Part shown: positions 10,101-36,663 of the stretch, piece after piece | Numbering within the stretch: the first letter of the stretch is position 1 | Layout of the letters: each line of letters opens with the position of its first letter | Source: Macrostomum lignano | Taxonomy: Eukaryota | Assembly (NCBI GenBank): GCA_002269645.1 | Contig: NIVC01004164.1 | Coordinates: 1-57,317, forward strand | Direction: 5' to 3' | DNA: 57,317 nt | Made by a program: the position numbers and the translations under genes | Notes under the pieces: model-generated | Told to the model about the DNA's origin: nothing | Seen by the model: the letters and a program-made list of their open reading frames with translations, nothing else | The model's database searches: none

Positions 10101-10359
10101 CTAGCTATAGAAAAAGAAAAAGAAGCCAATAACCTTCCTAATGAATAAATTAATTAATATTAGTTCAGTTGTGTATTTACTTTATATTTATTGTCATATG
10201 AATTATATACTTATATTGCATTTAGCCTAGGCCTATCTACTCTAGTCTGCCTATCCTCTACCTATGTTTGTTCTCTCAATCATTATATTTTTACTTTTTC
10301 CCTCTCTTAATTCCTTTATATCATGCTTCTCAATTATCTCCCATCTTTGCCCCTCCCCA

Positions 10360-11640: not shown

Positions 11641-11774
11641 ACCCTCCTGCTTTTCCTATCCTTCCCGCGTTATACTTTTCCCTATCCAGCCTCTACTATT
11701 CCCTCTTTCCACCTCCAGCGCCTCCCCCTCTCTAGCCCCTACCCTCTCTTCCTTTACTTTCCAGCCCCCATCCT

Positions 11775-17830: not shown

Positions 17831-20800
17831 ACGTTGTGTATACTTCAATCGGTCGAATAAATAGAAAAACCATCCTCCATCAACTCCGCCCCTTCGATCC
17901 ACCTCCATCAGCTCCGCCCCTACCGCCCCCCATCAGCTCCGCCCCTACCGCCCCCCATCAGCTCCGCTCCTACCGCCCCCCATCAGCTCCGCCCCTCCAA
18001 AAGCTCCGCCGCTACCGCCCCCCATCAGCTCCGCCCCTCCAAAAGGTCCGCCCCAACGCCTCCCTTCATCAGCTCCTCTACGACAAAGTAATGGTTAAAC
18101 ACAGCGTGCAGCTCTAAGACAGCGAATATACAGTTATCAACAAATCATTCTCTAGGAAACTTGATCGACACAAATAATTGGCACCAGTATTGCTTTCGAC
18201 TACGTTAACGAGACGCGCCAATTCAAATAGGACGCCATACGAGATCTTTGCGAGTATTGCAAGACAACAGTGGCAGAAAAAGACTAGAGTGGGAAGTGAG
18301 TTGCTTGCTTCCTATTCAGGTTAGTATTTTGCGTTGGTCTAACTTGAGCCTGGGGCACAGACTGTGGTCAGGGAAAGAGCAGGGAAAGTGGAAGTAGGAA
18401 AAGTGACTCCAATTTTATTTACGTACCAAGATTTCCTTGGTTCTATCCGCGATCCGAAGATCAAATATACTAAGTCTGCGGAGCTCAGTCTGCTTTCCAT
18501 ATACTCGTACCTTTGCTTGAGGAGCATTTGGATCAGTGAGGAGTCTGGCTAAAGTCTCGTTTCGATTGCCAAAAGCGATACAGTATTACATTACAATGTA
18601 TTTCAAGCGATTAAACTGGTCAATGGGCTATAAGTTGCATTCAGCAACAGATTCATATTGAGGCCACACAATGTGACATTATTGGCACAATGTTACGTCA
18701 ATAAATGCAGAAGTATAGTATATAGTTGTAATACAGAAAAGCGACAATAGTTAGATAATGACATTGGAAATTGAATTTCGCGATAGTATTACACCAACGC
18801 CACACGGCATTAACGCCGAACGGTGAAAAGTTAAACACAAGAAAAATGCACGGACTTGAAAGTAAACGATTTGCTTGGTTGCGTCGGAATTAAATCAGTA
18901 AATCAGTAAGAAGCATACGCTTTTTAAATTGCGAGTACCCGGTATGCACCATCACAGTTCGCAGCTGGGCAAATTATTCTGAAGAGAAGAAGAATTACGA
19001 TTTTATTAGCAGAGCTACGAGAAGGGGAGCCGCCGGGGGAGGAGGGGCTAGGGAAAGAGGAGGGTATAAAAGGCTATTTAAAAACACTGTAGCAGACGGG
19101 TTATGCATGACACAGTAAGTAAAACAGAGAGGAGGGAAGAGCGTAACGAAGGGATAACCAAGGAGAGTAGAGGGTGGGCGCTGGAGTGGAGGAGAGGGAG
19201 GGCGCTGGAGTGGAGGAGAGGGAGGGCGCTGGAGTGGAGGAGAGGGAGGGCGCTGGAGTGGAGGAGAGGGAGGGCGCTGGAGTGGAGGAGAGGGAGGGCG
19301 CTGGAGTGGAGGAGAGGGAGGGCGCTGGAGTGGAGGAGAGGGAGGGCGCTGGAGTGGAGGAGAGGGAGGGCGCTGGAGTGGAGGAGAGGGAGGGCGCTGG
19401 AGTGGAGGAGAGGGAGGGCGCTGGAGTGGAGGAGAGGGAGGGCGCTGGAGTGGAGGAGAGGGAGGGCGCTGGAGTGGAGGAGAGGGAGGGCGCTGGAGTG
19501 GAGGAGAGGGAGGGCGCTGGAGTGGAGGAGAGAGAGGGCCCTGGAGTGGAGGAGAGGGAGGGCGCTGGAGTTGAGGAGAGGGAGGGCGCTGGAGTGGAGG
19601 AGAGGGAGGGCGCTGGAGTGGAAGAGAGGGAGGGCGCTGGAGTGGAAGAGAGGGAGGGCGCTGGAGTGGAAGAGAGGGAGGGCGCTGGAGTGGAAGAGAG
19701 GGAGGGCGCTGGAGTGGAGGAGAGGGAGGGCGCTGGAGTGGAGGAGAGGGAGGGCGCTGGAGTGGAGAGAGAGGGCCCTGGAGTGGAGGAGAGGGAGGGC
19801 GCTGGAGTGGAGGAGAGGGAGGGCGCTGGAGTGGAGTAGAGGATGGGGGCTGGAAAGTAAAGGAAGAGAGGGTAGGGGCTAGAGAGGGGGAGGCGCTGGA
19901 GGTGGAAAGAGGGAATAGTAGAGGCTGGATAGGGAAAAGTATAACGCGGGAAGGATAGGAAAAGCAGGAGGGTATGGAGAGCATAGGGAGGGCATAGAGG
20001 GTACAGGGAGTCCATGGGTGGGTATAGAAAAAGTATGGAGGGTATGGAGAGGTTATAAGGAGAGTATAGGGATGGTATGGAGGGTATAGGGATGGTATTG
20101 AGGGTATAGGAATGGTATGGAGGGTATAGGGATGGTATGGAGGGTATATGGAGGGTAAGAATGGGTATAGAAGGGTATGGAGGGTATAGGGAGAGTATTG
20201 AGGGTATATGGAAGGCATAGAGGGTACAAGGAGGCCATGTATGGGTATAGAAAAAATATGGAGGGTATGGAGAGTATATGGAGGGTATATGGAGGGTATA
20301 GAGGGTATAGGGAGAGTTTTGAGGGTATAAGGAGGGTATAGAGAATAGGAGGGAATGGAAGGGTAGAACGGGAGGGAATGGAAGGGTAGAACGGGAGGGA
20401 ATGGAGGGGGTAGAATGTGAGGGAATGGAAGGGTAGAATGGGAGGGAATGGAAGGGTAGAATGGGAGGGAATGGAGGGGGTAGAATGTGAGGGAATGGAG
20501 GGGTAGAATGGGAAGGAATAGAAGGGTAGAATGGGAAGGAATGGAAGGGTAGAATGGGAGGGAATGGAGGGGGTAGAATGTGAGGGAATGGAAGGGTAGA
20601 ATGGGAGGGAATGGTGGGGGTAGAATGGGAGGGAATGGAGGGGTAGAATGGGAAGGAATGGAAGGGTAGAACGGGAGGGAAAGGTGGGGTAGAATGGGAG
20701 ACACAGAAAAACTGCTTACTAGAACAAATATAATATTAAAGTACACCTTGCAACATTTTTGTTAGCATTAGCTAGATAGAGGCACCTGGAAAAGAGTTGG

Positions 20801-22306
20801 CAATATCCAACTATAACTTATTGAACTTAAGGTAGTTAAATAGTTCCATATTTTCTAGCTCTATAGTTTCGCCTTTTTGAAAGGTGCTTGAAATGCTGAA
20901 TTCAATTTTCCAATTTGAAATCCATTTCTAGATTTTGAATTGCCTTGGGTTTATAGCTTAAAACCCAAGGGTGAAAAGATTGAAGGGCAGGATGGCGGAA
21001 ATTGGGGGATAGGCAGGATAGGAAGGAATTGGGGGTGGGCAGGATAGGAGGGAATTGGGGGTGGGCAAGATAGGAGGGAATTGGGGGTGGGCAGGATAGG
21101 AGGGAATTGGGGGTGGGCAGGATAGGAGGGAATTGGGGGATAGGCAGGATAGAAGGGAATTGGGGAGGGGCAAAGATGGGAGATAATTGAGAAGCATGAT
21201 ATAAAGGAATTAAGAGAGGGAAAAAGTAAAAATATAATGATTGAGAGAACAGACATAGGTAGAGGATAGGCAGACTAGAGTAGATAGGCCTAGGCTAAAT
21301 GCAATATAAGTATATAATTCATATAACAATAAATATAAAGTAAATACACAACTGAACTAATATTAATTAATTTATTCATTAGGAAGGTTATTGGCTTCTT
21401 TTTCTTTTTCTATAGCTAGGCCTATACATTTCATAATATTGGCCTACAACAATTATTAGATTGTTAGACAAGAAGCATAAAATATAATAGGGTCTAAAAT
21501 AGCTAGCCTATTTTAGACCATATACATTTTATAGACTAATAATTTAGTAGGCCTACTCTTAATAGCTATAGGCCTATTACTAAAATAAAATAACATAGCT
21601 AGCTACCTATCATAGGCCTAAAATTGACAAGGCCTTTTGTGTTTCTTTTCATGGTACAAGTATAGAGTGATATTAAAATAAAGAATACAACTAAGAGCTA
21701 AAAAATTATACTAAATACCTGGCAATAAAGAAGAAAAACAAAGTAGATTAAAGCAGAATGCAGTACAAAATGGCCCACATATTGATAAGAAGGCCAATAT
21801 AAGGCCAATAACTGGGTGAGCCAAGGCCACCTAGCTAGCTAGCCATCAAGCTTTTACTTTTTTTAAAGCCAATTAATATCTGCCTGCAACAGGACCATTT
21901 CATCCTTATTGTCATTGTCAAGAGGTCCAAGTAGCTAGTTTATTTTACAATCATTAACCTCCTAATTAAATTTCATTCAGTCATGTCATACATGGCTTTT
22001 TGTGCAAGCTAGGGCGACACATTTCCAAAGTTTTCGACTCTAGACACAAACTGCTTTATTAGTCTAGGTCTTGAATTCATACATACTAACACAATGCCCT
22101 ATACTAATTAAATATGTCGAGCCATTATAATATTGGTTGTGCGTAGGCTTTTGAATTGCGCGCCATAACTGCCCAATACAAGTATATACAGTCCGCTTTT
22201 AATCAGAAGGAAAGCATGTTATGCTGGCAGTCGACATGCCATCTACCCTATCTAATCGTAGAAAACGTTTACCTTTTCTACCGATTAAATCCATGCTGGT
22301 CGGGTG
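17831..22306 (-). repeat. Right TIR arm (4476 bp)
   Basis: Starts acgttgtgtatacttcaatcgg; shorter than the left arm because internal arrays have fewer units. Confidence 0.93.
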
Positions 22307-22312
22307 ATACCG

Positions 22313-22435
22313 ATAATCGGCTATCTTCAAGTTTCGTTCGTTTAATTATTTCCGGAATTATTTCGCCCTCTATTCAAGGGTGGTGGGGGGTGGGTGTTAG
22401 AATTAAACGAACGAAACTTGAAGAAAGCCGATTAT
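22313..22435. mobile_element. Small ~123-bp inverted-repeat element (MITE-like)
   Basis: ataatcggctatcttcaagtttcgttcgtttaatt ... aattaaacgaacgaaacttgaagaaagccgattat; one mismatch; TSD not clear. Confidence 0.65.
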
Positions 22436-23779
22436 AGCTGGACAAGGCTAGGTTTAGGCCTAAATATATGAAAACTAAATGAATTTGGGCTAGGCAACAA
22501 TTATATTGCTAGCTAGCCTAGCCCAGCAGGTAGTAAGTAGGCCTACTTTTTGAATCTATTAAGTCTTTAATAAAATTTTATTTCAATCTTTATATCACTA
22601 ACTTTTTATACAATTAGCAACCTTTGTAGGCTTAATAAATGAATTATATTTAGAATTTTTTTAGAAATATTTAGAAAAGATAAAATATTCTTTTTTAAAT
22701 AATTTATTATTCATTAATAAAAAATAAAAATATCTAGCCTCTCTCTCTATCTCTCTCCCCTCATTGCACTTTGTGAGTGCTCTGCTGGATTGTGCAATCT
22801 ACTGTTAATCTATATATACATTTCTAACTTTTACCAACCCATTTTTGTCTAAATTGTTAAATATAAATAAATAAACAAATAAATTGTAACTAAATTTTAA
22901 GAGCCTGACAATGCCTGATGCAAGGCAAAACATTTTGCATAACAAAAAGTGATACTGATCGTCTGATAGTGCTCATGTTCTTAATTAGACTAAGATATTT
23001 GTCTCTACCTTTGTGTTTGTCTCTGTCTTTGTCTTTGTCTTATCTGTGTCCCTATCCCTATGCTTATCTTTGTCTTATCTGTGTCCCTATCCTTATGCTT
23101 GTCTTTATTTCTTTCCTTGCCCTTGTCTAGTGTTCTGCCATAAAGAGGGTCCATGTGCCATAGCCATAGCCATAAGCAAAACTATGGCTTATTCCGATTT
23201 TCTATATTCCATAGTTGTAGAAACCTCAATATTATTATATTCTTATAGTTCCCATAGCCTTAGCTATAGGCCTAGTTTTAAGAAAAGTCTAAGAAACAAA
23301 TATTTTGAACCACGAATATAACCTAGAACTTAAACAACTGCAAATTAAGGTAGAAAATAAAACAAACACTCAGTTGCCTTTATAAGATTATAACTCATCT
23401 TTATACAAAGAGTAATGATACTTAATCACTATTAAAAGTACTACTGCTGAACTTTTTGACATTAATAAAAGTTAGAGTTTGCTAATGTTTTATTGTACTT
23501 TATTAGATATAATTTATAAGTTTTTAAGTCTATAATATAGTTTACCAAAGTATCTTTGTTTTACTCTACCTATTTGTGTTTCTAATATTTTTTAATTTTT
23601 TTAAATTAATAACTATAGCTATGGGAATCTACAGAATATGACAGCAACTACCATATTTCTATAGTCATAGCCATAAGAGCAGCTAGCTACTGTAGGTGTA
23701 TCCATAGTTGCCGTAGGCACCTATTTTACTATATTTTCTATAGGATCCCATAGCCATAGTCATAGCTACGGCAAAACAA

Positions 23780-24272
23780 TACCCTTGTCCCTATCCCTGT
23801 CCTTGTTTCTATCATATCCCTGTCCTTGTTTTTATCATATCCCTGTCCTTGTTTCTATCATATCTCTGTCCTTATCCCTGTCCTTGTCCACCTTGTCTCT
23901 GTTCCTGCACCCATCCTTGTCCCCACCTTGTTCTTATCCCTGTCCCTGTAACTCTCATAGCTCCTATTCCTGTCCTGTCCTTGTCCATGTCATTGCTCCT
24001 ATTCTTGTCTCTGTCCCCATCATTGCTTCTATTCCTGTCCCTGTCACTGTCATTGCTTATATTTCCATCCCTATCCCTATCATTGCTTCTATCCCTGTCC
24101 CTGTCCCTGTCACTGTCATTGCTTATATCTCCATCCCTATCCCTATCATTGCTTCTATCCCTGTCCCTGTCCCTGTCACGGTCATTGCTTCTATTCCTGT
24201 CCCTGTCACTGTTATTGCTCCTATTCCTGTCCCTGTCCCTGTCACTGTTATTGCTCCTATTCCTGTCCCTGT
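23780..24272. repeat. Degenerate pyrimidine-rich repeat (cctgtc / attgcttctatccctgtccctgtc)
   Basis: Direct reading; similar low-complexity tract at ~23000-23130. Confidence 0.85.
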
Positions 24273-26089
24273 TGCCTGACTACCAAGCAGCCACTCAAAG
24301 GTCCAAATCCCCGCTGCAGTCCTGGCGTGAGCAGCTCGCCCACAGCTTGCTGGCGGCAGCAGCTGAGGCCACTGGCTGCGCGGCCCCCCAGCCGGCTTGG
24401 CTGGCGCAGCTGCCCCGCAGCTACAGCCGCTACGGCGACCTGGCGCTGTTCCCAGAGGGCACCCTGGACCACCCCAGCTTCGCCGAGCTGGCCGCCTCGG
24501 GCCGGCTGTGGCCGACCGTCTGCGGCTTACTGAAAGTTCGCCGGCTGGCCGTCGTTCGCCGCGTCGCCCGCGATGGAGTCCGGAGCTCGCGCAGCCGCTT
24601 GCTGTACACCGAGCCCGGCTGCGACCCCGCCAGCGCCACCGTGGCCACCTGCGTTGAGCACGGAGTCTCGTTATCCTGGGACATTGCCGACTGCATGTTC
24701 AGCCGGGGCAACGCGGCCGAGAGGCATCGCCTGGTGCCGCTGGTGGCAGCGGCCGCTGCTGATGGCAGCGAGTCCTGCATTGTTGATCTGTTTGCCGGTG
24801 AGATCAGGGCGTTCCTGACTTCAGTTATGCTATAACTTTAGGTTGCCCCGATCCCCGCAGCCTTAACTAGGTTATCCCCATTCCCATTGCCTCAGGTTAT
24901 CCCCATTCCCACAGCCTCAGGTTATCCCCATTCCCACAGCCTCAGGTTATCCCCATTCCCACAGCCTCAGGTTATCCCCATTCCCACAGCCTCAGGTTAT
25001 CCCCATTCCCACAGCCTCAGGTTATCCCCATTCCCACAGCCTCAGGTTATCCCCATTCCCACAGCCTCAGGTTATCCCCATTCCCACAGCCTCAGGTTAT
25101 CCCCATTCCCACAGCCTCAGTTTATCCCCATTCCCACAGCCTCAGGTTATCCCCATTCCCACAGCCTCAGGTTATCCCCATTCCCACAGCCTCAGGTTAT
25201 CCCCATTCCCACAGCCTCAGGTTATCCCCATTCCCACAGCCTCAGGTTATCCCCATTCCCACAGCCTCAGGTTATCCCTCCATTTGTATCCGCACCACCT
25301 GCGCACCCTGGCTCCCTGGCAGGCATCGGTTACTTCACGCTGCCGCTGCTGGCCCGCACCGGGATCGCCCAGGTGATCGCCATCGACTGGAACCCGGCTG
25401 CCCTGCGCTGGCTGCGCCGCAACCTGCAGAACAATCGCATCGGCGAGTCGCGCTGCCGCGTCCTGCAGGGCGACAACCGGCTGGTGGCGCCCGCCGACCT
25501 GGCGGACCGAGTGCTCCTGGGCCTCGTGCCCAGCTCCCGCCTGTCCTGGCCAGCCGCCTGCCGCTGCCTGCGGCCCGCCGGCGGCTGGCTGCACGTGCAC
25601 GAGAACTGCGACTCGCCCAGGGAGGCGACCGGCTGCAACAAAGACCATCCGAATGCTGATGGAAGCGACAAAGACTCCGAGGATGCTTCTAGAACTGACA
25701 AAGACCTGTCTGTTCGCGGGAGCAGCGATGGCGCCTTTGGCGGCTTAGCAATCACCTCTAATTGCTTCTACAAAGACCGCGCCGCAACAGCCGCTGCACA
25801 CGCGGCTTTCCTGAACTCTCCGCATGCGCCTGCAGCGGAGCTGCCGCCGCCAGACGCCGCTGACTGCGACGAGGACCCGCTGGCGGAAGCGGCCGAGACG
25901 CCACCAGTCTGCAGCCGGTCGCGCCCGCACCCGGCCTGGCTGTCCATGGCCGCCTCGATGGCGCGCGAACTTCGGCGCCACATGCCGCCTGGCTGGCGCG
26001 TCAGAGTGGCGCGCATCCAGTTCGTGAAATGGTACGCTCCCCGCGTGGCGCATCTCGTGTTTGATGTGGAGTGCCGACCGGCCGGCTGA
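24272..26089 (+). CDS. TRMT12: tRNA wybutosine-synthesizing protein 2 (TYW2/TRMT12, Met-10+-like); N-terminus not located
   Basis: Exons ~24272-24797 and 25323-26089 (GT 24798, AG 25321-25322, phase 1 gives VDLFAG|IGYFTLP). LPRSYSRYGDL, CMFSRGN, DWNP, GDNR, ADRVLLGLVPSS, GWLHVHEN, VKWYAPRVAHLVFDVECRP. Confidence 0.9.
24890..25278. repeat. 25-bp intronic array (cctcaggttatccccattcccacag)
   Basis: About 15 units inside the TYW2 intron. Confidence 0.95.
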
Positions 26090-26280
26090 CCCGACCGGCT
26101 TTGCCTACTGTCAGTAGCGTAGCAGGCGTTTTGAGTTTTAATAGTAGATTGATTAGTGCGTGGGTTTTCTAATTATGCTCGAATTTTTGCAATTGTTTGC
26201 ATTTTAATTGAAATATATGCTTCATGCATCCTTAAATATTTTACACTATGAAATAATGCTTTCATTTGTTTTTTATTTAA

Positions 26281-27687
26281 AACTACCACTCAATCCCTGA
26301 TCAGTCCCTGAGTCTGCCTGTCCACTCAATCCCTGATCAGTCCTTGAGTCTGCCTGTCCACTCAATCCCTGATCAGTCCCTGAGTCTGCCTGTCCACTCA
26401 ATCCCTGATCAGTCCCTGAGTCTGCCTGTCCACTCAATCCCTGATCAGTCCCTGAGTCTGCCTGTCCACTCAATCCCTGATCAGTCCCTGAGTCTGCCTG
26501 TCCACTCAATCCCTGATCAGTCCCAGAGTCTGCCTGTCCACTCAATCCCTGATCAGTCCCAGAGTCTGCCTGTCCACTCAATCCCTGATCAGTCCCTGAG
26601 TCTACCTGTCCACTCAATCCCTGATCAGTCCCTGAGTCTGCCTGTCCACTCAATCCCTGATCAGTCTTTGAGTCTGCCTGTCCACTCAATCCCTGATCAG
26701 TCCCTGAGTCTACCTGTCCACTCAATCCCTGATCAGTCCCTGAGTCTGCCTGTCCACTCAATCCCTGATCAGTCCCTGAGTCTGCCTGTCCACTCAATCC
26801 CTGATCAGTCCCAGAGTCTGCCTGTCCACTCAATCCCTGATCAGTCCCAGAGTCTGCCTGTCCACTCAATCCCTGATCAGTCCCAGAGTCTGCCTGTCCA
26901 CTCAATCCCTGATCAGTCCCAGAGTCTGCCTGTCCACTCAATCCCTGATCAGTCCCTGAGTCTACCTGTCCACTCAATCCCTGATCAGTCCCTGAGTCTG
27001 CCTGTCCACTCAATCCCTGATCAGTCCTTGAGTCTGCCTGTCCACTCAATCCCTGATCAGTCCCTGAGTCTGCCTGTCCACTCAATCCCTGATCAGTCCC
27101 AGAGTCTGCCTGTCCACTCAATCCCTGATCAGTCCCTGAGTCTGCCTGTCCACTCAATCCCTGATCAGTCCCTGAGTCTGCCTGTCCACTCAATCCCTGA
27201 TCAGTCCCAGAGTCTGCCTGTCCACTCAATCCCTGATCAGTCCCAGAGTCTACCTGTCCACTCAATCCCTGATCAGTCCCTGAGTCTGCCTGTCCACTCA
27301 ATCCCTGATCAGTCCCTGAGTCTGCCTGTCCACTCAATCCCTGATCAGTCCCAGAGTCTACCTGTCCACTCAATCCCTGATCAGTCCCAGAGTCTGCCTG
27401 TCCACTCAATCCCTGATCAGTCCCTGAGTCTGCCTGTCCACTCAATCCCTGATCAGTCCCAGAGTCTGCCTGTCCACTCAATCCCTGATCAGTCCCAGAG
27501 TCTGCCTGTCCACTCAATCCCTGATCAGTCCCAGAGTCTGCCTGTCCACTCAATCCCTGATCAGTCCCAGAGTCTACCTGTCCACTCAATCCCTGATCAG
27601 TCCCTGAGTCTACCTGTCCACTCAATCCCTGATCAGTCCCTGAGTCTACCTGTCCACTCAATCCCTGATCAGTCCCTGAGTCTGCCT
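26281..27687. repeat. 36-bp intergenic array (ccactcaatccctgatcagtccctgagtctgcctgt)
   Basis: About 39 head-to-tail units, no spacers. Confidence 0.97.
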
Positions 27688-27727
27688 CAAAAGCCGTCAA
27701 CCTGAAGCTCACCCCTCACTCTTGCAG

Positions 27728-30362
27728 CGGCAATCCCTTCAACAGCAGCAGCTGGCCGCTGCCCTCCGCCAGCTGGCTTTGCTTCTTCCACGGCGCCGAC
27801 TTGCTGGCAGCTCTTCGTCATCCTCATCCGCGCCCGCTGCCACTCCCGCCCCGGCCGAGCCTCAGCGCCGCCCCCGCCGACAGTCGCCGGCGGCCGCCGC
27901 AGCCGCCGCCTCGGACGCAGCAGCCGCTGCGGTCGGCGCTGCCCCCTCGCCTGATGGCGTCCGGTCGACTCGGCTGCTCACCAACTCGCTGATGGGGCTG
28001 GGCAGCTGGAAGACGCGGATCAACTATCCCATTCTGGAGCAGCAGAGCATGCGGCAGGGCAAGTTGGTGCCGCGCATCACCTGCCAGTATGTCGGCAGCT
28101 GCACCTCCCAGGGCCGGCGCCAGTACCAGGAGGACCGGCTGGTGTACAAAGACCTGCAGGTGCGCTGTTCTATTCGGGTCTTTCAGCTTCCCGTAACCTC
28201 CGTCTTCAGGTTCCCCCAGCCCGTAACCTCCCTGTCTTCAGGTCCCCCCAGCCCGTAACCTCCCTGTCTTCAGGTTCCCCCAGCCCGTAACCTCCCTGTC
28301 TTCAGGTCCCCCCAGCCCGTAACCTCCCTGTCTTCAGGTTCCCCCAACCCGTTACCTCCCTGTCTTCAGGTCCCCCAGCCCGTAACCTCCGTCTTCAGGT
28401 CCCCCCAGCCCGTAACCTCCCTGTCTTCAGGTTTCCCCAACCCGTAACCTCCGTCTTCAGGTTCCCCCAACCCGTTACCTCCCTGTCTTCAGGTCCCCCA
28501 GCCCGTAACCACCCTGTCTTCAGGTCCTCCCAGCCCGTAACCTCCGTCTTCAGGTCCCCCCAGCCCGTAACCACCCTGTCTTCAGGTCCTCCCAGCCCGT
28601 AACCTCCGTCTTCAGGTCCCCCAGCCCGTAACCTCCGTCTTCAGGTCCCCCCAGCCCGTAACCTCCCTGTCTTCAGGTTCCCCCAACCCGTATTGAAGTG
28701 TTCGGATACTTCAGCTTGCAATGTGGGAGATCGCTACAGATAATCTCCCTGCCGCACCCAGGAGAACCTGCTGTTCATCGGGATATTCGACGGTCACGGC
28801 GACGCTGCGGCCGCCGACTTCCTGGTGGAGCGCCTGCCGGACCTCGCGCACTTCTGGTGCCGCCAGCAGCCGCGCTTGGACGTGGCGCTCCGCCGCTCCT
28901 TCGTGGAGGCTAACAACCTGTTCCAGCGTCACCTGCAGCGGCTCAGCAGCGGCCAGGCCGGTCGTTTCGCCAGCGGCTCCACCGCCACCGTCTGCCTGCT
29001 GCGCAACTCCACCGAACTGGCTGTGGCCAACGTCGGCGACTCCAAAGCGGTGCTGTGCCGCTCCGGCCGGCCTGAGCTGCTGTCGGTGGACCACGACCCC
29101 GCCCTGGAGGAGGAGCAGGCCCGCATTCACGCCCGCGGCGGGGTCGTCACCTCCAACAGTCTAGGCAACCCCGTGGTCAACGGCCGCCTCAGCATGACCA
29201 GGTGAGGTTGGGGCATTCTGATTCGCCTTTGACCATGTCTGATCTCCTGTGTCTGATCCTGTGTCTGATCCGCCTCTCCCTGTGTCTGATCCGCCTCTAC
29301 CTGTGTCTGATCTGCCTCTACCTGTGTCTGATCTGCCTCTACCTGTGTCTGATCTGCCTCTACCTGTGTCTGATCCGCCTCTCCCTGTGTCTGATCCGCC
29401 TCTACCTGTGTCTGATCCGCCTCTCCCTGTGTCTGATCCGCCTCTACCTGTGTCTGATCCGCCCCTATCTAGATCTGATCCGTCCCCATTTACATGTAGA
29501 TCTGATCCGCCCCCCTTTTTACATGTAGATCTGATCCGCCCCCATTTACATGTAGATCTGATCCGCCCCCTTTTTACATGTAGATCTGATCCGCCCCCCT
29601 TTTTACATGTAGATCTGATCCGCCCCCCTTTTTACATGTAGATCTGATCCGCCCCCCTTTTTACATGTAGATCTGATCCGCCCCCCTTTTTACATGTAGA
29701 TCTGATCCGCCCCCCTTTTTACCAGGGGCGTAGCCAGGAATTTCCTACGGGGGGGGATACACCAAGGTGAATTTCCTACGGGGGGGGATACACCAAGGTA
29801 AAAGTGCTCACATGGTAGCATGTATAGCGAAAAAGTGCAACAAAAAAGTTTTGGTCAGGCTCTTCGGGGGGGGATACATCCCCCCTGATCCCCCCCCTCC
29901 CTACGCCACTGCTTTTTACATGTAGATCTGATCCGCCCCCCTTTTTACATGTAGATCTGATCCGCCCCCCTTTTTACATGTAGATCTGATCCGCCCCTCC
30001 GACTTTGCCCCATCCGCAGGTCCATCGGAGACTGCGAGATGAAGCCCTTCGGCGTGACGGCGCAGCCCCACCTGCGCTGTCTGGAGGTTCGGCACGGCCG
30101 CGACGCCTTCCTGCTGCTGGTGACAGACGGAGTGGCCTTCGTGATGAGCGTCAAGGAGATGGTGGACATCGCGTCGACCTGCGCCACGCCGCAGGAGGCC
30201 GCCGAGATCATCGTTGACCAGGCGATGCAGTTCGGCAGCGAGGACAACACCACGGCGGTGATCCTACCGTTCGGCTCCTGGGGCAAGTACGCCAAGCAGA
30301 TGAGCTGCATGCCCTACTCCATGGGCCGCAACTTCCTGGCTAACCGCTTCACTTCCAGCTGA
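27728..30362 (+). CDS. PPM1K: Mitochondrial PP2C-family phosphatase, PPM1K/PP2Cm orthologue
   Basis: Exons 27728-28159, 28762-29201, 30020-30362 with phase-compatible GT/AG junctions. GSWKTRINYPIL, GRRQYQEDR, IFDGHG, SGSTATVCLL, ANVGDSKAVLCR, VNGRLSMTRSIGD, LVTDG, GSEDNTTAVILPFGSWGKY. No ATG at the 5' end of the first exon. Confidence 0.92.
28190..28692. repeat. ~30-bp array in PPM1K intron 1 (cccgtaacctccctgtcttcaggtcccccag)
   Basis: Direct reading. Confidence 0.92.
29232..30000. repeat. Two arrays in PPM1K intron 2 (21-bp gtgtctgatccgcctctacct, then ~30-bp tacatgtagatctgatccgcccccctttt)
   Basis: Direct reading; second array interrupted by a MITE. Confidence 0.92.
29723..29911. mobile_element. 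189-bp hAT-type MITE
   Basis: Termini CAGGGGCGTAG / CTACGCCACTG; exact 8-bp TSD ctttttac at 29715-29722 and 29912-29919. Confidence 0.92.
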
Positions 30363-30445
30363 ACTGCCCCTGCTTGCCGGCTCTGCTTGCTTCTGCTGCT
30401 CTGAACAATTGCTTACTTCTAGGGGCTGGTCCGTTGCCCTGAGAG

Positions 30446-30578
30446 GGATCATGGGGTTGGTGGTGAGGGTGCGGCTCAGGGAGTGAAGGATCATGGGGTT
30501 GGTGGTGAGGGTGCGGCTCAGGGAGTGAAGGATCATGGGGTTGGTGGTGAGGGTGTGGCTGAGGGAGTGAAGGACCAT
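30446..30578. repeat. 42-bp repeat x3 downstream of PPM1K
   Basis: gatcatggggttggtggtgagggtgcggctcagggagtgaag. Confidence 0.9.
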
Positions 30579-31094
30579 GAAGTCAAGTTGAAGCGACGCG
30601 AATCGCTCAGATCTAAATTTTTTTGTAAAAATTTATAGTTGTTTTTGTCGTATATTATTGTTAAAATTCGACGCGTCTACTGTCAGTAGTTTACCAATTT
30701 TTAACTATGGTGTCATTAGCAGCTGTTGCGTCAGTAGTTTTGCATTCTTGCGGCATTCAATACTGACAATAGTATAAATTCGATTAAACTACCTGTGAAC
30801 AAGACTGACTGTGCGTGAGTCTTTGTACTTATACAATATACTTATCTCATTCATAATGTACTTTGCACTATCAGACATTAGCAGCCAGACAGATTTAAGG
30901 CACTGTGTGATTCCCAGCCTACAGTGTATTTTTATTTTTGCCTTTTACTCGTATACACAGGTCGGCAAGAATCTCAAATAAACGGATCCACGATGTGGCG
31001 TCTCGCGCCGACTCCAGCATCGCTTCCTTATCGGATTTCGCCACCTTATCTGTGTTGCTTTTATTCTGCCAGTCCGATCCACTCGGACCATCCC

Positions 31095-31481
31095 CCCATG
31101 TACACCCGCCACTATCAGCCACCCAGCCCTCCCCCAATGTACACTCGCCACTATCAGCCACTCAGCCCCTCCCCCAATGTACACTCGCCACTATCAGCCA
31201 CTCAGCCCCTCACCCAATGTACACTCGCCACTATCAGCCACTCAGCCCCTCCCCCAATGTACACTCGCCACTATCAGCCACTCAGCCCCTCACCCAATGT
31301 ACACTCGCCACTATCAGCCACTCAGCCCCTCCCCCAATGTACACTCGCCACTATCAGCCACTCAGCCCCTCCCCCAATGTACACTCGCCACTATCAGCCA
31401 CTTAGCCCCTCCCCCAATGTACACTCGCCACTATCAGCCACTCAGCCCCTCCCCCAATGTACACTCGCCACTATCAGCCAT
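31095..31481. repeat. 40-bp array upstream of the DUF1295 gene
   Basis: tacactcgccactatcagccactcagcccctcccccaatg, about 9-10 units. Confidence 0.93.
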
Positions 31482-31526
31482 AAAACTTTCCCTTCCCACC
31501 TCCTGCTGTCCCACCTGAGCTCCGCA

Positions 31527-32915
31527 ATGGGTAACGCAGTTATCAAGCTGACAGGCCTCAGCATGGGGATCCAGTGGGCCTGCTTTCCCGTGGCCTACTA
31601 CCTGGGCACCGAGAAATTCTACGACATCGCCGGAGCTGTCACCCACCTCGCCCTGCTGGGATTCGCCACCAAGCGGCTGTTCCCTCCAGTTGGGCTGCGC
31701 GGCTGGGCGCCCGTCTGCATGGCCGGCCTGTGGACCCTTCGGCTGGGATGCTTCCTGGGCTACCGCGGCCTGCGCTCCGGTGACCGCCGATTCAACCGGA
31801 TCAAGGTGAGGGCATAGTTCAGGTGGTGTATATTAACTACCTGTTTCCTAATTTCGCTTAAACGTCTTATTATCTACCTGAATTCCAATGATATCAAACT
31901 AATCAAATCAAGCCCCAGCTTAATTGGGGTCCTAATCATCCCCAACTCTAATTATCCCTAACCCTAATCTCCCCAACCCTAATATCCCTAACCCTAATCT
32001 CCCGAACCCTAATCATCCCCAGCCCTAATCCCTTCCTTAATTATCCCCAACCCTTATCATCCCAAACCCTAATCCCATCCTTAATTATCCCCAACTCTAA
32101 TCATCCCGAACCCTAATCCTATCCTTAATTATCCCCAACTCTAATCATCCCGAACCCTAATCCTATCCTTAATTATCCCCAACTCTAATCATCTCGAACT
32201 CTATTCCCATCCTTAATTATCCTCAATTCTAATCATCTCGAACCCTAATCCTACCCTTAATTATCCCCAAATCTAATGATCCCGAACCCTAATCCCATCC
32301 TTAATTATCCTCAACTCTAATCATCTCGAACCCTAATCCTACACTTAATTATCCCCAAATCTAATCACCCCGAATCCCCAACCGGCATCTCCCCATCGCC
32401 AGACTCAGCCGGGCGCCTTCCTAGCCGCCTGGACCATGCAGGGCGCGTGGGCGCTGGGCAACCTGGCGCCAACCCTCACCGCTCTGGCCTGCATGTCGGC
32501 CGCCGGTGCCGCAGCGGCCCGCCGTCCGGTGTGCCTGCGCGAGCAGCTGGGCTGGGCGCTGTTCTGCTTCGGCCTGACCATCGAGGCCGTGGCCGACTGG
32601 CAGAAGCTGGCCTTCAGGTCCGACCCGGACAACGCCAGGCGCTTCATCTCCAGCGGGCTGTGGGCTCGCAGCCGGCACCCGAACTACTTTGGCGAGCTGT
32701 GCCTGTGGGCGGGCCTCGCCGCCTCCGCCTCCGCAAGCTTCAGCCGGCCGCTGCACTGGGCGAGCCTGGCCGGGCCGGTGCTGAACTCCTGCCTGGTGCT
32801 GTTCGTGTCCGGCCTGCCGCTGCTGGAGGCCGCGGCCAGGAAGCGTTGGGGCTCCGACCCCGCCTACCAGGAGTACGAGAGCCGGACTCCCCTGCTGGTG
32901 CCGCGCCTGTTCTAG
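31527..32915 (+). CDS. DUF1295 / steroid 5-alpha-reductase-like integral membrane protein
   Basis: Exons 31527-31805 and 32403-32915 (phase 0, RFNRIK|TQPGAF). TEKFYDIAG, LRLGCFLGYR, GDRRF, EAVADWQKLAF, FISSGLWARSRHPNYFGE, FVSGLPLLE, WGSDPAYQEY. Confidence 0.9.
31915..32385. repeat. Degenerate CCCTAA-containing intronic array
   Basis: ccctaaccctaatc and aaccctaatcc variants filling the DUF1295 intron. Confidence 0.75.
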
Positions 32916-33039
32916 GCTGCTGACCTTCCACTGACAAGACTTCTGTGTCCGCGTAGATTTAAACGATTCTTATCCTGATCGGGCTTTGATTTTGATGCTT
33001 GATTTATCTGGGGGTCGAGATTTTGATGAGATCTTTAAG

Positions 33040-33245
33040 TCAACTCTCTTAAAAGGGTGAGATTTTGAAGTTCCCATCTGATTGGGGTGAGATTTTGAAG
33101 TTCCCATCTGATTGGGGTGAGATTTTGAAGTTCCTATGTGATTGGGGTGAGATTTTGAAGTTCCTATGTAATTGGGGTGAGATTTTGAAGTTCCCATCTG
33201 ATTGGGTGAGATTTTGAAGTTCCCATCTGATTGGGGTGAGATCTG
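33040..33245. repeat. 30-bp array (gattttgaagttcccatctgattggggtga)
   Basis: About 6 units. Confidence 0.9.
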
Positions 33246-33611
33246 GCAGTTTGGAGTTTCTATATCGTCAGGATGAATCCGTTTAAGTTTTTGACGTTTT
33301 CTTCAAAATTGTGTTCTGAGAAATGCTTTAGAATGATTGGCCCAATGTGCACTGCTTAAATTCACTCGGAGATTTGATATTAAATTTGAGTCCTGTCTCC
33401 TACATGGCTTCTTTGTGAGTTGAGTTTTCTGGACTGTGGACTGTCTGATATCGATAAGACCGGAGCTGATTTGCTATTTTTATCAATGCGGTTCAATTTA
33501 AATTTTTCATTTCCACCTTAATTTTAGTATAAAAAAATATACCATCAACTTAGACCAACTTGTTCAATTTAGTTTTTCAATCCAATTCTAATCAGTCGCT
33601 TGTTCAGTAAG

Positions 33612-34282
33612 TCTGCCAGAACAAAGACCGCAGTGCACCAGTCACCTATTAATCAACGCCCAGGATTGCACCAGAACAAAGACCGCAGTGCACCAGTCAC
33701 TTATTCACCAGTGCCCAATATTACACCAGAACAAAGACCGCAGTGCACCAGTCACTTATTCACCAGTGCCCAAGATTACACCGGAACAAAGACCGCAGTG
33801 CACCAGTCACTTATTCATCAGTTCCCAAGATTACACCAGAACGAAGACCGCAGTGCACCAGTCACTTATTCACCAGTGCCCAAGATTACACCAGAACGAA
33901 GACCGCAGTGCACCAGTCACTTATTCACCAGTGCCCAAGATTACACCAGAACAAAGACCGCAGTGCACCAGTCACTTATTCACCAGTTCCCAAGATTACA
34001 CCAGAACGAAGACCGCAGTGCACCAGTCACTTATTCACGAGTGCCCAATATTACACCAGAACAAAGACCGCAGTGCACCAGTCACTTATTCACCAGTGCC
34101 CAAGATTACACCAGAACAAAAACCGCAGTGCACCAGTCACTTATTCACCAGTGCCCAAGATTACACCAGAACAAAGACCGCAGTGCACCAGTCACATATT
34201 CACCAGTGCCCAAGATTACACCAGAACAAAGACCGCAGTGCACCAGTCATTCACCAGTGCCCAGGCTCACACCAGAACAAAG
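33612..34282. repeat. 55-bp array upstream of the fourth gene
   Basis: gaccgcagtgcaccagtcacttattcaccagtgcccaagattacaccagaacaaa, about 12 units. Confidence 0.93.
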
Positions 34283-34303
34283 AATCCGCCGCTCTCCCCG
34301 CAG

Positions 34304-36663
34304 TCCCAGTCAGCCGCCGAGGAATCCGTCGATGTCGCCAGCCGGGCTTGCTGCTGCGCCGACGTTCTGCGTCGAGCCGGGACGTCGCCAATGGCGGTCT
34401 CCGTCGAGGGCCTCTGCGAGTGGGCGGTGGCCGACCTGCACTGCCGCACCTGGCCGGGCGCCTGCCGCCAACTGCCACCACCGCCGCTGCCGCCAACAAC
34501 GTCGCAGTCGATCAAGTCGCTGTCGGAGGCCGTTGCCGCCGATGATGCGGCGCTACTGAGCCGCCTTCTGCTGGAAGGCGCGGTCGCAGCCGACTCGAAG
34601 GAGGCGGACGCCCTGCTGGCTGAGGCGGCCGGCCGCGGCCTGGCCGGAGTCTGCCACCAGCTGCTGCTGTCGCTGACGCCGCCGCCCACCGAGGAGGGGC
34701 GCGAAGCTGCGCTGATGGCGGCTGCGGAGACCGGCGCCGTCGTGAGCTGCGCCGTCTTGCTGGGCCACGGCGTTCGTCCGCGTCAACCTGCGCTACGTCT
34801 GGCGCTGGCGTCCGGTTGCCAAGCAACCGTCCTGCTGCTGCTGCGCGCAGGGGCGCCTTTCAGCGCATCTGGACTGGTGAGGATTCTGAAACGCTGCCGG
34901 GTGGGTTGCGTTGGAAATGGCCTTTCATTGTGCTCGTAACTACAGTGACAAAATCTGATTGGTGAGTGACAGTCTGATTGGTTAGAGTGACAGTCTGATT
35001 GGCCGAGTGACAGTCTGATTGGCCGAGTGACAGTCTTATATTGGCCGAGTGACAGTCTGATATTGGCCGAGTGACAGTCTGGTTGCCCGAGTGACAGTCT
35101 GATTGGCCGAGTGACACTCTGATTGGCGGAGTGACAGTCTGATATTGGCCGAGTGACATTCTGATTGGCGGAGTGACAGTCTGATTGGCGGAGTGACAGT
35201 CTGATTGGCGGAGTGACAGTCTGATTGGCCGAGTGACATTCTGATTGGCGGAGTGACAGTCTGATTGGCGGAGTGACAGTCTGATTGGCGGAGTGACAGT
35301 CTGATTGGCGGAGTGACAGTCTGATTGGCGGAGTGACAGTCTGATTGGCCGAGTGACAATCTGATTGGTGGAGTGACAGTCTGATTGGCCGAGTGACAGT
35401 CTGATTGGCCGAGTGACAGTCTGATTGGCCGAGTGACAGCCTGATTGGCCGAGTGACACTCTGATTGGCGGAGTGACAGTCTGATATTGGCCGAGTGACA
35501 GTCTGATTGGCCGAGTGACAGTCTGATTGGCCGAGTGACAGTCTGATTGGCCGAGTGACAGTCTGATTGGCCGAGTGACACTCTGATTGGCGGAGTGACA
35601 GTCTGATATTGGCCGAGTGACATTCTGATTGGCGGAGTGACAGTCTGATTGGCCGAGTGACAATCTGATTGGCGGAGTGACAGTCTGATTGGCCGAGTGA
35701 CAGCCTGATTGGCCGAGTGACAGTCTGATATTGGCCGAGTGACAGTCTGATTGGCCGAGTGACAGTCTGATTGGCCGAGTGACAGTCTGATTGGCCGAGT
35801 GACAGTCTGATTGGCCGAGTGACAGTCTGATTGGCCGAGTGACAGTCTGATTGGCCGAGTGACAGTCTGATTGGCCGAGTGACACTCTGATTGGCGGAGT
35901 GACAGTCTGATATTGGCCGAGTGACATTCTGATTGGCGGAGTGACAGTCTGATTGGCCGAGTGACAATCTGATTGGCGGAGTGACAGTCTGATTGGCCGA
36001 GTGACAGTCTGGTTGGCCGAGTGACAGTCTGATTGGCCGAGTGACAGTCTGATTGGCCGAGTGACACTCTGATTGGCCGAGTGACAGTCTGATTGGCCGA
36101 GTGACAATCCCTGCTGCCCAATTTCGAATTTCCAGTCGCCCAGCTTCGGCCTGAGCTGCCCTACCTGGCCGCAGCCGCAGGCGCTACTGGACTGGTCAGC
36201 GCAGCACCTGGCCGCCTGCGTCGCCGAGCTCAGGCGCGCAATTCCCCGTCTGCGCGTCCTCTGCTACCTGCTGTCCGGCCAGCACCCGCGCGGCCCCGTG
36301 CTAGTGGAGCCCGACCGCGTCGCTGTGGACCTCTGCCTGGATGCCATTCCGGCCGCAGACGGGGCTCTGGGCGGCTCCCAGCAGCTGCTGGTGCTGGCGA
36401 CTTGCCTGGTGGGTTACACTGGCTACCCCGCACCACTGATCCGCCTGTGGCCCTGCGTCGCCTTCGCCGAGCTCAACAGCAGCGGCGTCGACGCGCTGGT
36501 GCCGATGCCGAAGTGGCCAGGCGGCGGCGTCCACCGGCTGTCGGGCCTGCAGCCGGAGCGCGGCTGCCTGCTGCGGGTGGCGATGGCGCCGGAGAGACTG
36601 CGGCTGCCGCGCTACCGCTTCCTGCTGGCCGCCTTCCAGGTCGAGCTGCCCGCGTCCGGCTGA
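34304..36663 (+). CDS. Uncharacterised protein with ankyrin-like helical repeats
   Basis: Exons 34304-34876 and 36136-36663 join in phase 0 without stops; exon-like GC content. LMAAAETGAVVSCAVLLGHG and LALASGCQATVLLLLRAGA resemble ankyrin repeats. Family not recognised. Confidence 0.65.
34955..36107. repeat. 20-bp intronic array (ctgattggccgagtgacagt)
   Basis: Roughly 55-57 units filling the intron. Confidence 0.96.

What the first reader, a model, noticed from the sequence alone, without database searches (positions are those of the whole stretch)
27700..28000. PPM1K has no genomic start codon; a leader-supplied AUG gives a clean mitochondrial presequence
Seen: cttgcag|CGG CAA TCC CTT... 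is in frame with the phosphatase; the first in-frame ATG (~27991) would omit ~88 codons. Adding AUG gives MRQSLQQQQLAAALRQLALLLPRRRLAGSSS, an Arg/Leu/Ser-rich acid-free presequence. Known: PPM1K is mitochondrial, and flatworm spliced leaders end in AUG that can initiate translation. Inference: mitochondrial targeting here depends on trans-splicing.
Basis: partly seen in the sequence, partly recalled or inferred. Interest (0 to 1): 0.75.

Follow-up and report, generated by a model that had tools for sequence, protein, structure and literature searches.

The report
Flatworm phosphatase gene borrows its start codon
In the flatworm Macrostomum lignano the mitochondrial phosphatase gene PPM1K has no start codon of its own and almost certainly gets its AUG from the trans-spliced leader. 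This is a correct reading of the sequence, but it is one more example of a mechanism already known in flatworms.

Summary
The window is a complete 57,317-bp Macrostomum lignano scaffold. The PPM1K-like gene has exons 27728-28159, 28762-29201 and 30020-30362. It opens directly behind the acceptor cttgcag|CGG. An in-frame TGA lies 51 nt upstream. There is no ATG in any frame from 26259 to 27953, and the first in-frame ATG is at 27992, 88 codons in.

Every deposited M. lignano model of this gene lacks a Met. One UniRef sequence starts exactly at 27728. Two other genomic copies have the same layout.

The M. lignano spliced leader ends in ...TTGCATG. TTGCAG| is the only match to the published trans-acceptor motif [T/C]TNCAG between the upstream gene's stop and this exon. 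Joining the leader there puts its AUG in frame.

Orthologues all carry 40-110 residues before the point where ATG 27992 falls. Between gene copies, 5 of 6 substitutions in the 88-codon extension are at third codon positions.

The presequence looks plausible (no acidic residue for 44 residues, RRL|A site), but I ran no dedicated predictor. Codon usage in the extension is atypical, and no RNA reads could be checked.

Leader-supplied initiator AUGs are well documented in flatworms, so this is a new member of a known kind with modest interest.

The parts
24320..26089 (+). Upstream cistron: TYW2/Trm5-like tRNA methyltransferase (exons 24320-24797 and 25323-26089, stop at 26087-26089). It also starts at an acceptor (ctgcag|TCC) without a genomic ATG.
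   Evidence: My model matches UniRef100_A0A1I8JGH1 (M. lignano) at 100% in the BLASTP listing, apart from one residue (D/G). GenBank PAA48368.1 maps at 100% and is flagged 'partial'.
26090..26285 (+). AT-rich 3'UTR of the upstream gene. It holds the only ATGs between the two genes (26175-26256) and poly(A)-signal-like hexamers.
   Evidence: None of these ATGs opens an ORF with a usable phase-0 donor.
26286..27687 (+). 36-bp C/T-rich minisatellite (about 39 copies) that fills the intercistronic or outron region. It has no ATG, no consensus donor and no YTNCAG.
   Evidence: The copy number is 38, 12 and 3 in the three genomic copies.
27677..27679 (+). In-frame TGA that closes the PPM1K frame 51 nt upstream of the acceptor.
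   Evidence: It is replaced by AGA in copy L009, where the next in-frame stop is at -87.
27710..27727 (+). Pyrimidine tract plus 3' splice acceptor, cacccctcactcTTGCAG|. It matches the M. lignano trans-splice acceptor motif [T/C]TNCAG.
   Evidence: The motif comes from PMC8629364. This is the only match between the TYW2 stop and the exon. The last 37 nt before the junction are identical in the three copies.
27728..27991 (+). 88-codon N-terminal extension with no genomic start codon. Residues 2-26 (27728-27802) form the putative presequence, with an RRL|A (R-3) cleavage motif. A Ser/Ala/Pro-rich linker follows.
   Evidence: Five of six substitutions against copy L009 are at third codon positions and there are no indels.
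27992..27994 (+). First in-frame genomic ATG. It falls inside the conserved 'NFDTLGSW' motif that precedes the PP2C domain.
27728..28159 (+). PPM1K exon 1 (donor CAG|gtgcgc).
   Evidence: tblastn of PAA48369.1 and A0A1I8HLP8.
28762..29201 (+). PPM1K exon 2 (PP2C domain, FDGHG motif).
30020..30362 (+). PPM1K exon 3 with stop TGA at 30360-30362.
31527..32915 (+). Downstream cistron: DUF1295 / steroid-reductase-like gene. It has its own ATG at 31527, 7 nt behind an AG.

Best explanation
The PPM1K-like gene is the middle gene of a same-strand cluster, TYW2-like, then PPM1K, then DUF1295, in Macrostomum lignano.

Proposed mechanism: its pre-mRNA has no 5' exon of its own. The 35-nt spliced leader (CGGTCTCTTACTGCGAAGACTCAATTTATTGCATG) is trans-spliced onto the acceptor at 27727/27728. 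The mature mRNA then begins ...UUGCAUG|CGGCAAUCC. The leader's terminal AUG is the first AUG of the message and lies in frame. Translation from it yields a 405-residue protein. Its first roughly 26 residues (MRQSLQQQQLAAALRQLALLLPRRRL|AG) act as a mitochondrial presequence, followed by a low-complexity linker and the PP2C catalytic domain.

What is shown here:
- the gene structure;
- the absence of any genomic start codon in three genomic copies;
- the in-frame geometry;
- the motif match;
- the Met-less public gene models;
- orthologue N-terminal extensions;
- the third-position substitution bias.

What is inferred: that the leader is actually joined at this site, that its AUG is used, and that the extension directs mitochondrial import.
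For: 1. Organism. GenBank proteins PAA48368.1, PAA48369.1 and PAA48370.1 come from a 57,317-bp contig of GCA_002269645.1 and map to the window at 97.9-100% identity.

2. Leader. [quoted passage not shown]

3. Acceptor. TTGCAG| at 27722-27727 fits the top trans-acceptor motif [T/C]TNCAG. It is the only such site in the 1,638 nt after the upstream stop. The same holds in both other copies.

4. No cis alternative. There is no ATG from 26259 to 27953. The five ATGs in the upstream 3'UTR open ORFs of 2 to 27 codons, and the only phase-0 GT among them is TTT|GTTTTT. The satellite GTs match at most 3 of 8 consensus donor positions.

5. Public models. UniRef100_A0A1I8JGS7 (404 aa, n=4) starts exactly at 27728 with RQSLQ and has no Met. 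PAA48369.1 and PAA89411.1 are flagged 'partial' and start 12 and 21 nt further in.

6. Polycistronic context. The intergenic distance is 1,638, 702 and 388 nt in the three copies, and the difference comes from satellite copy number. After subtracting the repeat, the distance is far below the 1-kb operon threshold of PMC8629364. UniProt models of 1,072 and 680 aa fuse TYW2-PPM1K-DUF1295 and PPM1K-DUF1295, and the first joins ...VFD|RQSLQ at this same acceptor.

7. Orthologues. The best hits are 'protein phosphatase 1K, mitochondrial-like' at 45-52% identity. All 10 aligned orthologues have 40-110 residues upstream of the column where M(27992) falls, which lies inside the conserved NFDTLGSW motif.

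8. Selection. Against copy L009, 5 of 6 differences in the extension are at third positions of this frame (binomial P about 0.018 against 1/3). Four are synonymous and there are no indels. Undoubted exons show 14 of 22 at third positions.

9. Presequence features. There are 5 Arg and 0 Asp/Glu in the first 30 residues, the first acidic residue is at position 45, Leu+Ala make up 13 of 30, and there are R-x-L|A motifs at 15-18 and 24-27. The joint null frequency is 1.6%. The other two frames give 0-1 basic residues.

10. Precedent. The leader AUG is in frame in 28% of S. mansoni trans-spliced mRNAs and is required by more than 40 cDNAs (PMC9851317). The same is seen in E. granulosus (PMC3510090).
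Against: - No RNA evidence could be examined, so the junction is inferred from DNA and from annotation boundaries.
- The extension does not look like typical coding sequence for this gene. GC3 is 0.70 against 0.87-0.97 in the rest. A local codon model prefers a shifted-frame pattern by about 19 log units, whereas all 12 control coding segments prefer the true frame.
- All three frames are open here, so openness of the frame is uninformative.
- Individual presequence features are common in stop-free shuffles of this G+C-rich stretch, at about 40% each. No TargetP or MitoFates run was possible.
- The leader AUG has a weak context (U at -3, C at +4).
- The comparison copy L009 carries a premature stop (CAG to TAG at the position equivalent to 28109). 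Part of its divergence may therefore be post-inactivation.
- The GenBank models start 12-21 nt inside the exon rather than at the junction.
Confidence: 0.78

Rival explanations
1. The stretch 27728-27991 is 5'UTR. Translation starts at the genomic AUG 27992 and gives a 316-residue phosphatase without a presequence.
For: Codon usage and GC3 of the extension are atypical for coding sequence in this gene. AUG 27992 lies just where strong conservation with orthologues begins. All three frames are open, so the long ORF could be a by-product of high G+C.
Against: If the leader is spliced at 27728, its in-frame AUG comes first and has no stop behind it. In the window and in copy L008 an out-of-frame ATG (27954) precedes 27992. 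All orthologues have N-terminal extensions, and the enzyme's known substrate is in the mitochondrial matrix (established knowledge). Substitutions in the extension are concentrated at third positions. The start would fall inside a conserved motif.
Confidence: 0.08
2. A cis-spliced upstream exon supplies the ATG. This could be an unrecognised 5' exon or a real TYW2-PPM1K fusion transcript that uses the same acceptor.
For: A UniProt model (A0A1I8JFU2, 1,072 aa) joins TYW2 ...VAHLVFD directly to RQSLQ. That is a cis junction from GAT|GTGGAG at about 26065/26066 to 27728. Flatworm acceptors are often shared between cis- and trans-splicing (PMC12582326).
Against: There is no ATG or usable donor between 26259 and 27727 in any of the three copies. 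TYW2 itself lacks a genomic ATG, so a fusion would not solve the problem. The separate GenBank and UniRef models end TYW2 at its own stop. Fused models are a recognised artefact of polycistronic pre-mRNA (PMC5730564; PMC12582326). GTGGAG is not the consensus GT[G/A]AG.
Confidence: 0.05
3. Translation starts at an in-frame near-cognate codon on an mRNA that is not trans-spliced, for example UUG at 27722 or CUG at 27752 or 27773.
For: Such codons exist in frame. Non-AUG initiation is documented in organisms that use spliced leaders (PMC9851317).
Against: It is an unnecessary assumption when an AUG-bearing leader is available. UUG 27722 lies inside the acceptor and would be removed by splicing. 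No promoter is evident in the satellite.
Confidence: 0.04
4. An assembly or annotation artefact: the true first exon was lost in a collapsed satellite array.
For: The region upstream is a 1.4-kb satellite whose length differs between copies. The window also holds a suspicious 4-kb perfect palindrome elsewhere.
Against: Three independently assembled copies, with 38, 12 and 3 satellite units, show the identical unique sequence on both sides of the array and the same acceptor.
Confidence: 0.02

Closest known systems
[quoted passage not shown]
   Same: The leader ends in AUG. The acceptor sits at a codon boundary of the main ORF. No genomic AUG can give an N-terminus matching the orthologues. That is exactly the criterion used for S. 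mansoni and E. granulosus cDNAs.
   Different: This case is in a free-living macrostomid rather than a parasitic neodermatan. I found no gene-level description of leader-AUG use for M. lignano; the literature only remarks that the ATG is probably a start codon. Here the borrowed AUG heads an 88-residue extension rather than a residue or two.
Targeting variants produced by trans-splicing: Echinococcus granulosus thioredoxin glutathione reductase (Agorio et al. 2003, cited in PMC12582326) and Trypanosoma brucei isoleucyl-tRNA synthetase (PMC3273800)
   Same: Trans-splicing decides whether the mRNA encodes an N-terminal mitochondrial targeting sequence.
   Different: Those cases rest on alternative trans-splice sites that give two isoforms. 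Here only one consensus acceptor is evident, and a second (cytosolic) isoform is speculative. I could only read the titles and citations of these papers, not their data.
M. lignano operons resolved by trans-splicing (Ustyantsev and Berezikov 2021, PMC8629364; Wudarski et al. 2017, PMC5730564)
   Same: Same-strand neighbours, an intercistronic region made mostly of repeats, a repeat-adjusted distance well under 1 kb, a YTNCAG acceptor, and gene models that fuse neighbours.
   Different: The operon status of this particular cluster was not looked up in their tracks. It is inferred here.
PPM1K / PP2Cm, the mitochondrial branched-chain keto-acid dehydrogenase phosphatase of animals
   Same: A PP2C domain (Pfam E = 4e-49). 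The best hits are all annotated PPM1K, at 45-52% identity. The pre-domain motif and C-terminal tail are conserved.
   Different: The N-terminal extension has no sequence similarity to other PPM1K presequences, which is usual for presequences. It contains long Ser, Ala and Pro runs.

Membership tests
Leader-AUG-initiated ORF (flatworm slORF) | The organism trans-splices a leader whose last three bases are AUG | tested here: met
   The window is an M. lignano scaffold. The leader is CGGTCTCTTACTGCGAAGACTCAATTTATTGCATG (PMC8629364). No leader gene lies in the window itself.
Leader-AUG-initiated ORF (flatworm slORF) | The 5' end of the mature mRNA is a trans-splice acceptor, shown by leader-containing cDNA or reads | not testable with these tools
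   Only indirect evidence is available. There is a unique YTNCAG match at the junction. The UniRef model starts exactly at 27728 and the GenBank models are 5'-partial. No read data were accessible, and the supplements searched held no entry for the gene.
Leader-AUG-initiated ORF (flatworm slORF) | The leader AUG is in frame with the main ORF, with no stop between | tested here: met
   27728 is a codon boundary, and frame 0 has no stop up to the end of exon 1.
Leader-AUG-initiated ORF (flatworm slORF) | No genomic AUG can give an N-terminus that corresponds to the orthologues | tested here: met
   The first in-frame ATG is 88 codons in and lies inside a conserved motif. All 10 orthologues extend 40-110 residues further. 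The same holds in the two other gene copies.
PPM1K (PP2Cm) orthologue | PP2C catalytic domain, with closest relatives annotated PPM1K | tested here: met
   Pfam PF00481, 168 bits, residues 122-368. The top named hits are all 'protein phosphatase 1K, mitochondrial-like'.
PPM1K (PP2Cm) orthologue | N-terminal mitochondrial targeting sequence and matrix localisation | tested here: inconclusive
   Simple features fit: basic, free of acidic residues, Leu/Ala-rich, and an R-3 motif. The joint null frequency is 1.6%. No trained predictor was run, there is no localisation data, and codon usage is atypical.
Downstream gene of an M. lignano operon | Same strand as the upstream gene, repeat-adjusted intergenic distance under 1 kb, and a trans-spliced 5' end | tested here: inconclusive
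   Strand and distance are met: 1,638 nt, of which 1,402 is satellite, and 388 nt in copy L009. Fused public models suggest polycistronic RNA. Trans-splicing itself was not observed.

The most novel reading that the evidence does not exclude
Trans-splicing acts as a localisation switch. Ribosomes that use the weak-context leader AUG make the mitochondrial enzyme. Leaky scanning past it, or mRNAs that escape trans-splicing, would reach AUG 27992 and make a cytosolic PP2C that lacks the presequence. In the window copy this would follow a 12-codon out-of-frame ORF that ends in an overlapping UGAUG. More broadly, two of the three cistrons in this cluster have lost their own start codons, so the leader has become indispensable for their translation. 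That would be a ratchet locking trans-splicing in place.
Probability: 0.1. Interest if true: 0.5.

Novelty: new member of a known kind. Interest (0 to 1): 0.3.

Why it matters
The practical value is for annotation. The deposited M. lignano proteins for this gene and for its upstream neighbour are labelled 'partial', or are fused to their neighbours. In fact they are probably complete once the leader's AUG is added. Pipelines that trim the leader together with its ATG will systematically mis-call such genes as 5'-truncated and will miss their targeting signals.

Biologically, this gene is a clear example where an organelle-targeting signal cannot be expressed without trans-splicing. M. lignano is amenable to transgenesis, so the idea can be tested. 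It does not change what is known about flatworm trans-splicing.

Tried and rejected
- The first homology search found nothing above 52% identity, which suggested the species was absent from the database. That was misleading. The exact M. lignano protein is present but hidden in a 90% cluster represented by the neighbouring TYW2 protein, because fused gene models chain the two together.
- There is no leader gene, Rfam family or tRNA in the window.
- Transcript contigs of distant PPM1K relatives (P0001, P0044, P0045, P0048) have ordinary 5'UTRs of 59-226 nt (one contig starts only 2 nt before the ORF). They say nothing about leader use.
- I recalled that S. mansoni phytochelatin synthase used the leader AUG for a mitochondrial isoform. 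The paper says the opposite: there is no evidence of trans-splicing. I dropped this as a precedent.
- The Agorio 2003 and Cheng 2006 papers are not held and are cited second-hand only.
- Supplements of three M. lignano papers hold no PPM1K or TRMT12 entry.
- The out-of-frame ATG 27954 / UGAUG arrangement looked like a reinitiation device, but the ATG is ACG in copy L009, so it is probably chance.
- I did not scan the metagenome collection for the predicted leader-exon junction, because M. lignano transcripts are not expected there.
Full report
**What is in the sequence**

At 27721-27727 the + strand reads cttgcag, followed by CGG CAA TCC CTT. Reading from 27728 gives RQSLQQQQLAAALRQLALLLPRRRLAGSSS... 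and runs without a stop into a PP2C phosphatase.

I built the gene model from splice signals and homology:
- exon 1 is 27728-28159 (donor CAG|gtgcgc);
- exon 2 is 28762-29201;
- exon 3 is 30020-30362 (stop TGA).

This gives 404 codons. Pfam places the PP2C domain at residues 122-368 (E = 4e-49).

The frame is closed 51 nt upstream by TGA at 27677. No ATG occurs in any frame from 26259 to 27953. The first in-frame ATG is 27992, 88 codons in.

**Which organism**

A retrotransposon ORF in the window has its closest named relatives in Macrostomum lignano, at 55-72% identity against 42% or less elsewhere.

The gene just upstream (24320-24797 and 25323-26089) matches a UniRef M. lignano 'tRNA wybutosine-synthesizing protein 2 homolog' at 100% in the BLASTP listing, apart from one residue (D/G).

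An exact-sequence look-up then showed that my 404-residue PPM1K model, without a Met, is itself in the collection as UniRef100_A0A1I8JGS7 (M. lignano, n=4). Three GenBank proteins lie on a contig of exactly 57,317 bp, the length of the window:
- PAA48368.1, the TYW2-like gene;
- PAA48369.1, PPM1K;
- PAA48370.1, DUF1295.

They map back at 97.9-100% identity per aligned block; PAA48368.1 and PAA48369.1 map at 100%. The assembly is GCA_002269645.1.

The first homology search missed the M. lignano protein because fused gene models place it in a cluster represented by the neighbouring gene.

**The public models agree that there is no start codon**

- A0A1I8JGS7 begins at R, which is 27728.
- PAA48369.1 (400 aa, 'partial') begins at 27740.
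- PAA89411.1, from another scaffold (397 aa, 'partial'), begins 21 nt into the exon.
- None has a Met before residue 89.

The genome paper states that transcript boundaries were cut at mapped trans-splicing peaks and that ORFs were then called (PMC5730564). That would produce exactly such Met-less 5'-partial proteins when the leader supplies the AUG. This last step is my inference.

**Is the site a trans-splice acceptor?**

The M. lignano leader is CGGTCTCTTACTGCGAAGACTCAATTTATTGCATG. The top motif at its acceptors is [T/C]TNCAG, positioned right at the junction (PMC8629364).

TTGCAG at 27722-27727 fits this motif. It is the only match in the 1,638 nt between the upstream stop (26089) and the exon.

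That interval consists of three parts:
- a 196-nt AT-rich 3'UTR;
- a 1,402-nt, 36-bp C/T-rich satellite;
- 40 unique bases.

The interval offers no usable cis exon. The five ATGs of the 3'UTR open ORFs of 2 to 27 codons, and the only phase-compatible GT is TTT|GTTTTT. The satellite GTs match at most 3 of 8 donor consensus positions.

Joining the leader at 27728 puts its AUG in frame: ...UUGCAUG|CGG CAA.

**Operon context**

The TYW2-like, PPM1K and DUF1295 genes lie head to tail on the + strand. After subtracting the satellite, the TYW2-PPM1K spacer is about 236 nt. That is far below the 1-kb repeat-adjusted threshold used for M. lignano operons.

Two UniProt models fuse the cistrons: 1,072 aa for TYW2+PPM1K+DUF1295 and 680 aa for PPM1K+DUF1295. 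The first joins ...VFD|RQSLQ at this very acceptor.

Such chimeras are the recognised signature of polycistronic pre-mRNA. A downstream cistron needs the leader for its cap, which raises the prior probability that this acceptor is used in trans.

**Two other genomic copies**

I fetched the paralogous or allelic loci L008 (NIVC01000151.1) and L009 (NIVC01000514.1).

Both have the same layout: 3'UTR, satellite, a single YTNCAG, then an ATG-less exon. The satellite has 12 and 3 units, against 38 in the window, which gives spacers of 702 and 388 nt. The 37 nt before the junction are identical in all three copies. This rules out an exon lost in a collapsed repeat.

L009 differs from the window at six positions in the 264-nt extension. 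Five are at third positions of the PPM1K frame, four are synonymous, and there are no indels.

Against an even spread over codon positions the binomial probability is about 0.018. Undoubted exons of the three genes show 14 of 22 differences at third positions. This is independent, if modest, evidence that the extension is translated in this frame.

One caveat applies: L009 has a premature stop in exon 1 (CAG to TAG at the position equivalent to 28109). That copy may be inactive.

**Is the extension needed, and is it a presequence?**

The closest named relatives are all 'protein phosphatase 1K, mitochondrial-like', at 45-52% identity. In an alignment with ten of them, M(27992) falls inside the conserved NFDTLGSW motif. 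Every orthologue has 40-110 residues before that column. That PPM1K acts on the branched-chain keto-acid dehydrogenase complex in the mitochondrial matrix is established knowledge, not something tested here.

With the leader Met, the first 30 residues have these features:
- five Arg and no Asp or Glu;
- first acidic residue at position 45;
- 13 Leu+Ala;
- a maximal hydrophobic moment of 0.39, within the orthologue range of 0.25-0.57;
- R-x-L|A motifs at 15-18 and 24-27.

The other two frames give 0-1 basic residues.

Stop-free shuffles of the same bases lack acidic residues, or have at least 5 basic residues, about 40% of the time each. The R-3 motif appears in 12%, the Leu/Ala richness in 0.25%, and four features together in 1.6%. 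The presequence is therefore plausible but less remarkable than it looks. I could not run TargetP or MitoFates.

**Evidence that cuts the other way**

- GC3 in the extension is 0.70, against 0.87-0.97 in the rest of the gene.
- A codon model trained on 730 local codons scores the extension 19 log units better as a shifted frame. All twelve 60-codon control segments prefer the true frame, including a low-GC3 insertion in TYW2.
- All three frames are open across the stretch.

I read this as a fast-evolving, weakly codon-biased leader peptide. It does keep the rival of initiation at AUG 27992 alive. That rival is weakened because an in-frame leader AUG would be met first. In addition, an out-of-frame ATG at 27954 precedes 27992 in two of the three copies.

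**Comparison with what is known**

A 3'-terminal AUG is a conserved feature of flatworm leaders (PMC12582326). In S. mansoni it is in frame in 28% of trans-spliced mRNAs, and more than 40 cDNAs need it (Cheng et al. 2006, as summarised in PMC9851317). [quoted passage not shown]

For Macrostomum, the ATG has been noted as a likely start codon (PMC10468722).

Trans-splicing that determines mitochondrial targeting has precedents in E. granulosus TGR and T. brucei IleRS. I saw only the titles and citations of those papers.

This locus is therefore a well-supported new instance of a known mechanism, not a new one.

**Verdict**

- Novelty is 'new member of a known kind'.
- Interest is about 0.3, mainly for annotation practice and as a testable example in a flatworm that can be made transgenic.

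Noticed in passing
window 24273-24797: The upstream TYW2/Trm5-like gene shows the same pattern. The acceptor ccgctgcag|TCC TGG sits at 24319/24320 (CTGCAG fits YTNCAG), and the leader AUG would be in frame (MSWREQ...). The first downstream in-frame ATG is at codon 125. The only upstream in-frame ATG (23987) lies inside a tandem repeat. All deposited models are Met-less: the UniRef model starts QSWREQ and the GenBank models are 'partial'.
   Followed up: partly
window 24320-32915 (+ strand): The TYW2-like, PPM1K and DUF1295 genes form an operon-like cluster. UniProt holds fused models of 1,072 aa (all three) and 680 aa (the last two). These fusions chain unrelated proteins into one 90% cluster, which hid the PPM1K protein from the first homology search.
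   Followed up: partly
window 26286-27687; L008 and L009 equivalents: The 36-bp intercistronic satellite varies from 38 to 12 to 3 units among three genomic copies, while the unique flanks stay 97-100% identical. It is C/T-rich on the sense strand and contains no ATG.
   Followed up: yes
L009 (NIVC01000514.1), position equivalent to window 28109: This copy of PPM1K has a premature stop (CAG to TAG) in exon 1. GenBank annotates only a 116-aa PP2C fragment there, and the fused UniProt model skips the seven codons around it. It is probably an inactivated homeologue or allele.
   Followed up: partly
window 27954-27994: An out-of-frame ATG (27954) opens a 12-codon ORF whose TGA overlaps the in-frame ATG 27992 (TGATG). 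The ATG is ACG in copy L009, so the arrangement is not conserved and is probably chance.
   Followed up: partly
window 31510-31535: The DUF1295 gene has its own ATG (31527) 7 nt behind an AG (31518-31519). If the leader is spliced there, its AUG is out of frame and opens a 5-codon ORF (MLRNG*) overlapping the real start. That would require leaky scanning past the leader AUG. The GenBank model on this scaffold starts one codon before the ATG and is flagged partial.
   Followed up: no
window 9720-13949 and 17977-21800: This is a near-perfect inverted repeat with arms of at least 4.2 kb at 99-100% complementarity. Much of it is satellite-rich sequence. It flanks a spacer of about 4 kb containing ORFs with no Pfam match. 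It could be a real palindrome or a long-read assembly artefact.
   Followed up: partly
window 1289-4428, 4691-5989, 46236-46649: Transposon remnants are present: a frameshifted Ty3/gypsy pol (closest named relatives in M. lignano, 55-72%), a hAT-family transposase-like ORF (dimerisation domain), and a DUF3504 ORF.
   Followed up: partly
window 27728-27991: The N-terminal extension has flat G+C across codon positions (0.80/0.72/0.70), unlike the strong GC3 (about 0.9) of the rest of the gene. It uses many non-preferred codons (CTT, GCT, CAA).
   Followed up: yes
window 20000-36000 generally: Nearly every intron and intergenic spacer in this gene cluster is filled by a different 20-55-bp minisatellite (for example 24869-25278, 28190-28692, 29258-29722, 31079-31480, 33616-34283, 34954-36000).
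   Followed up: no
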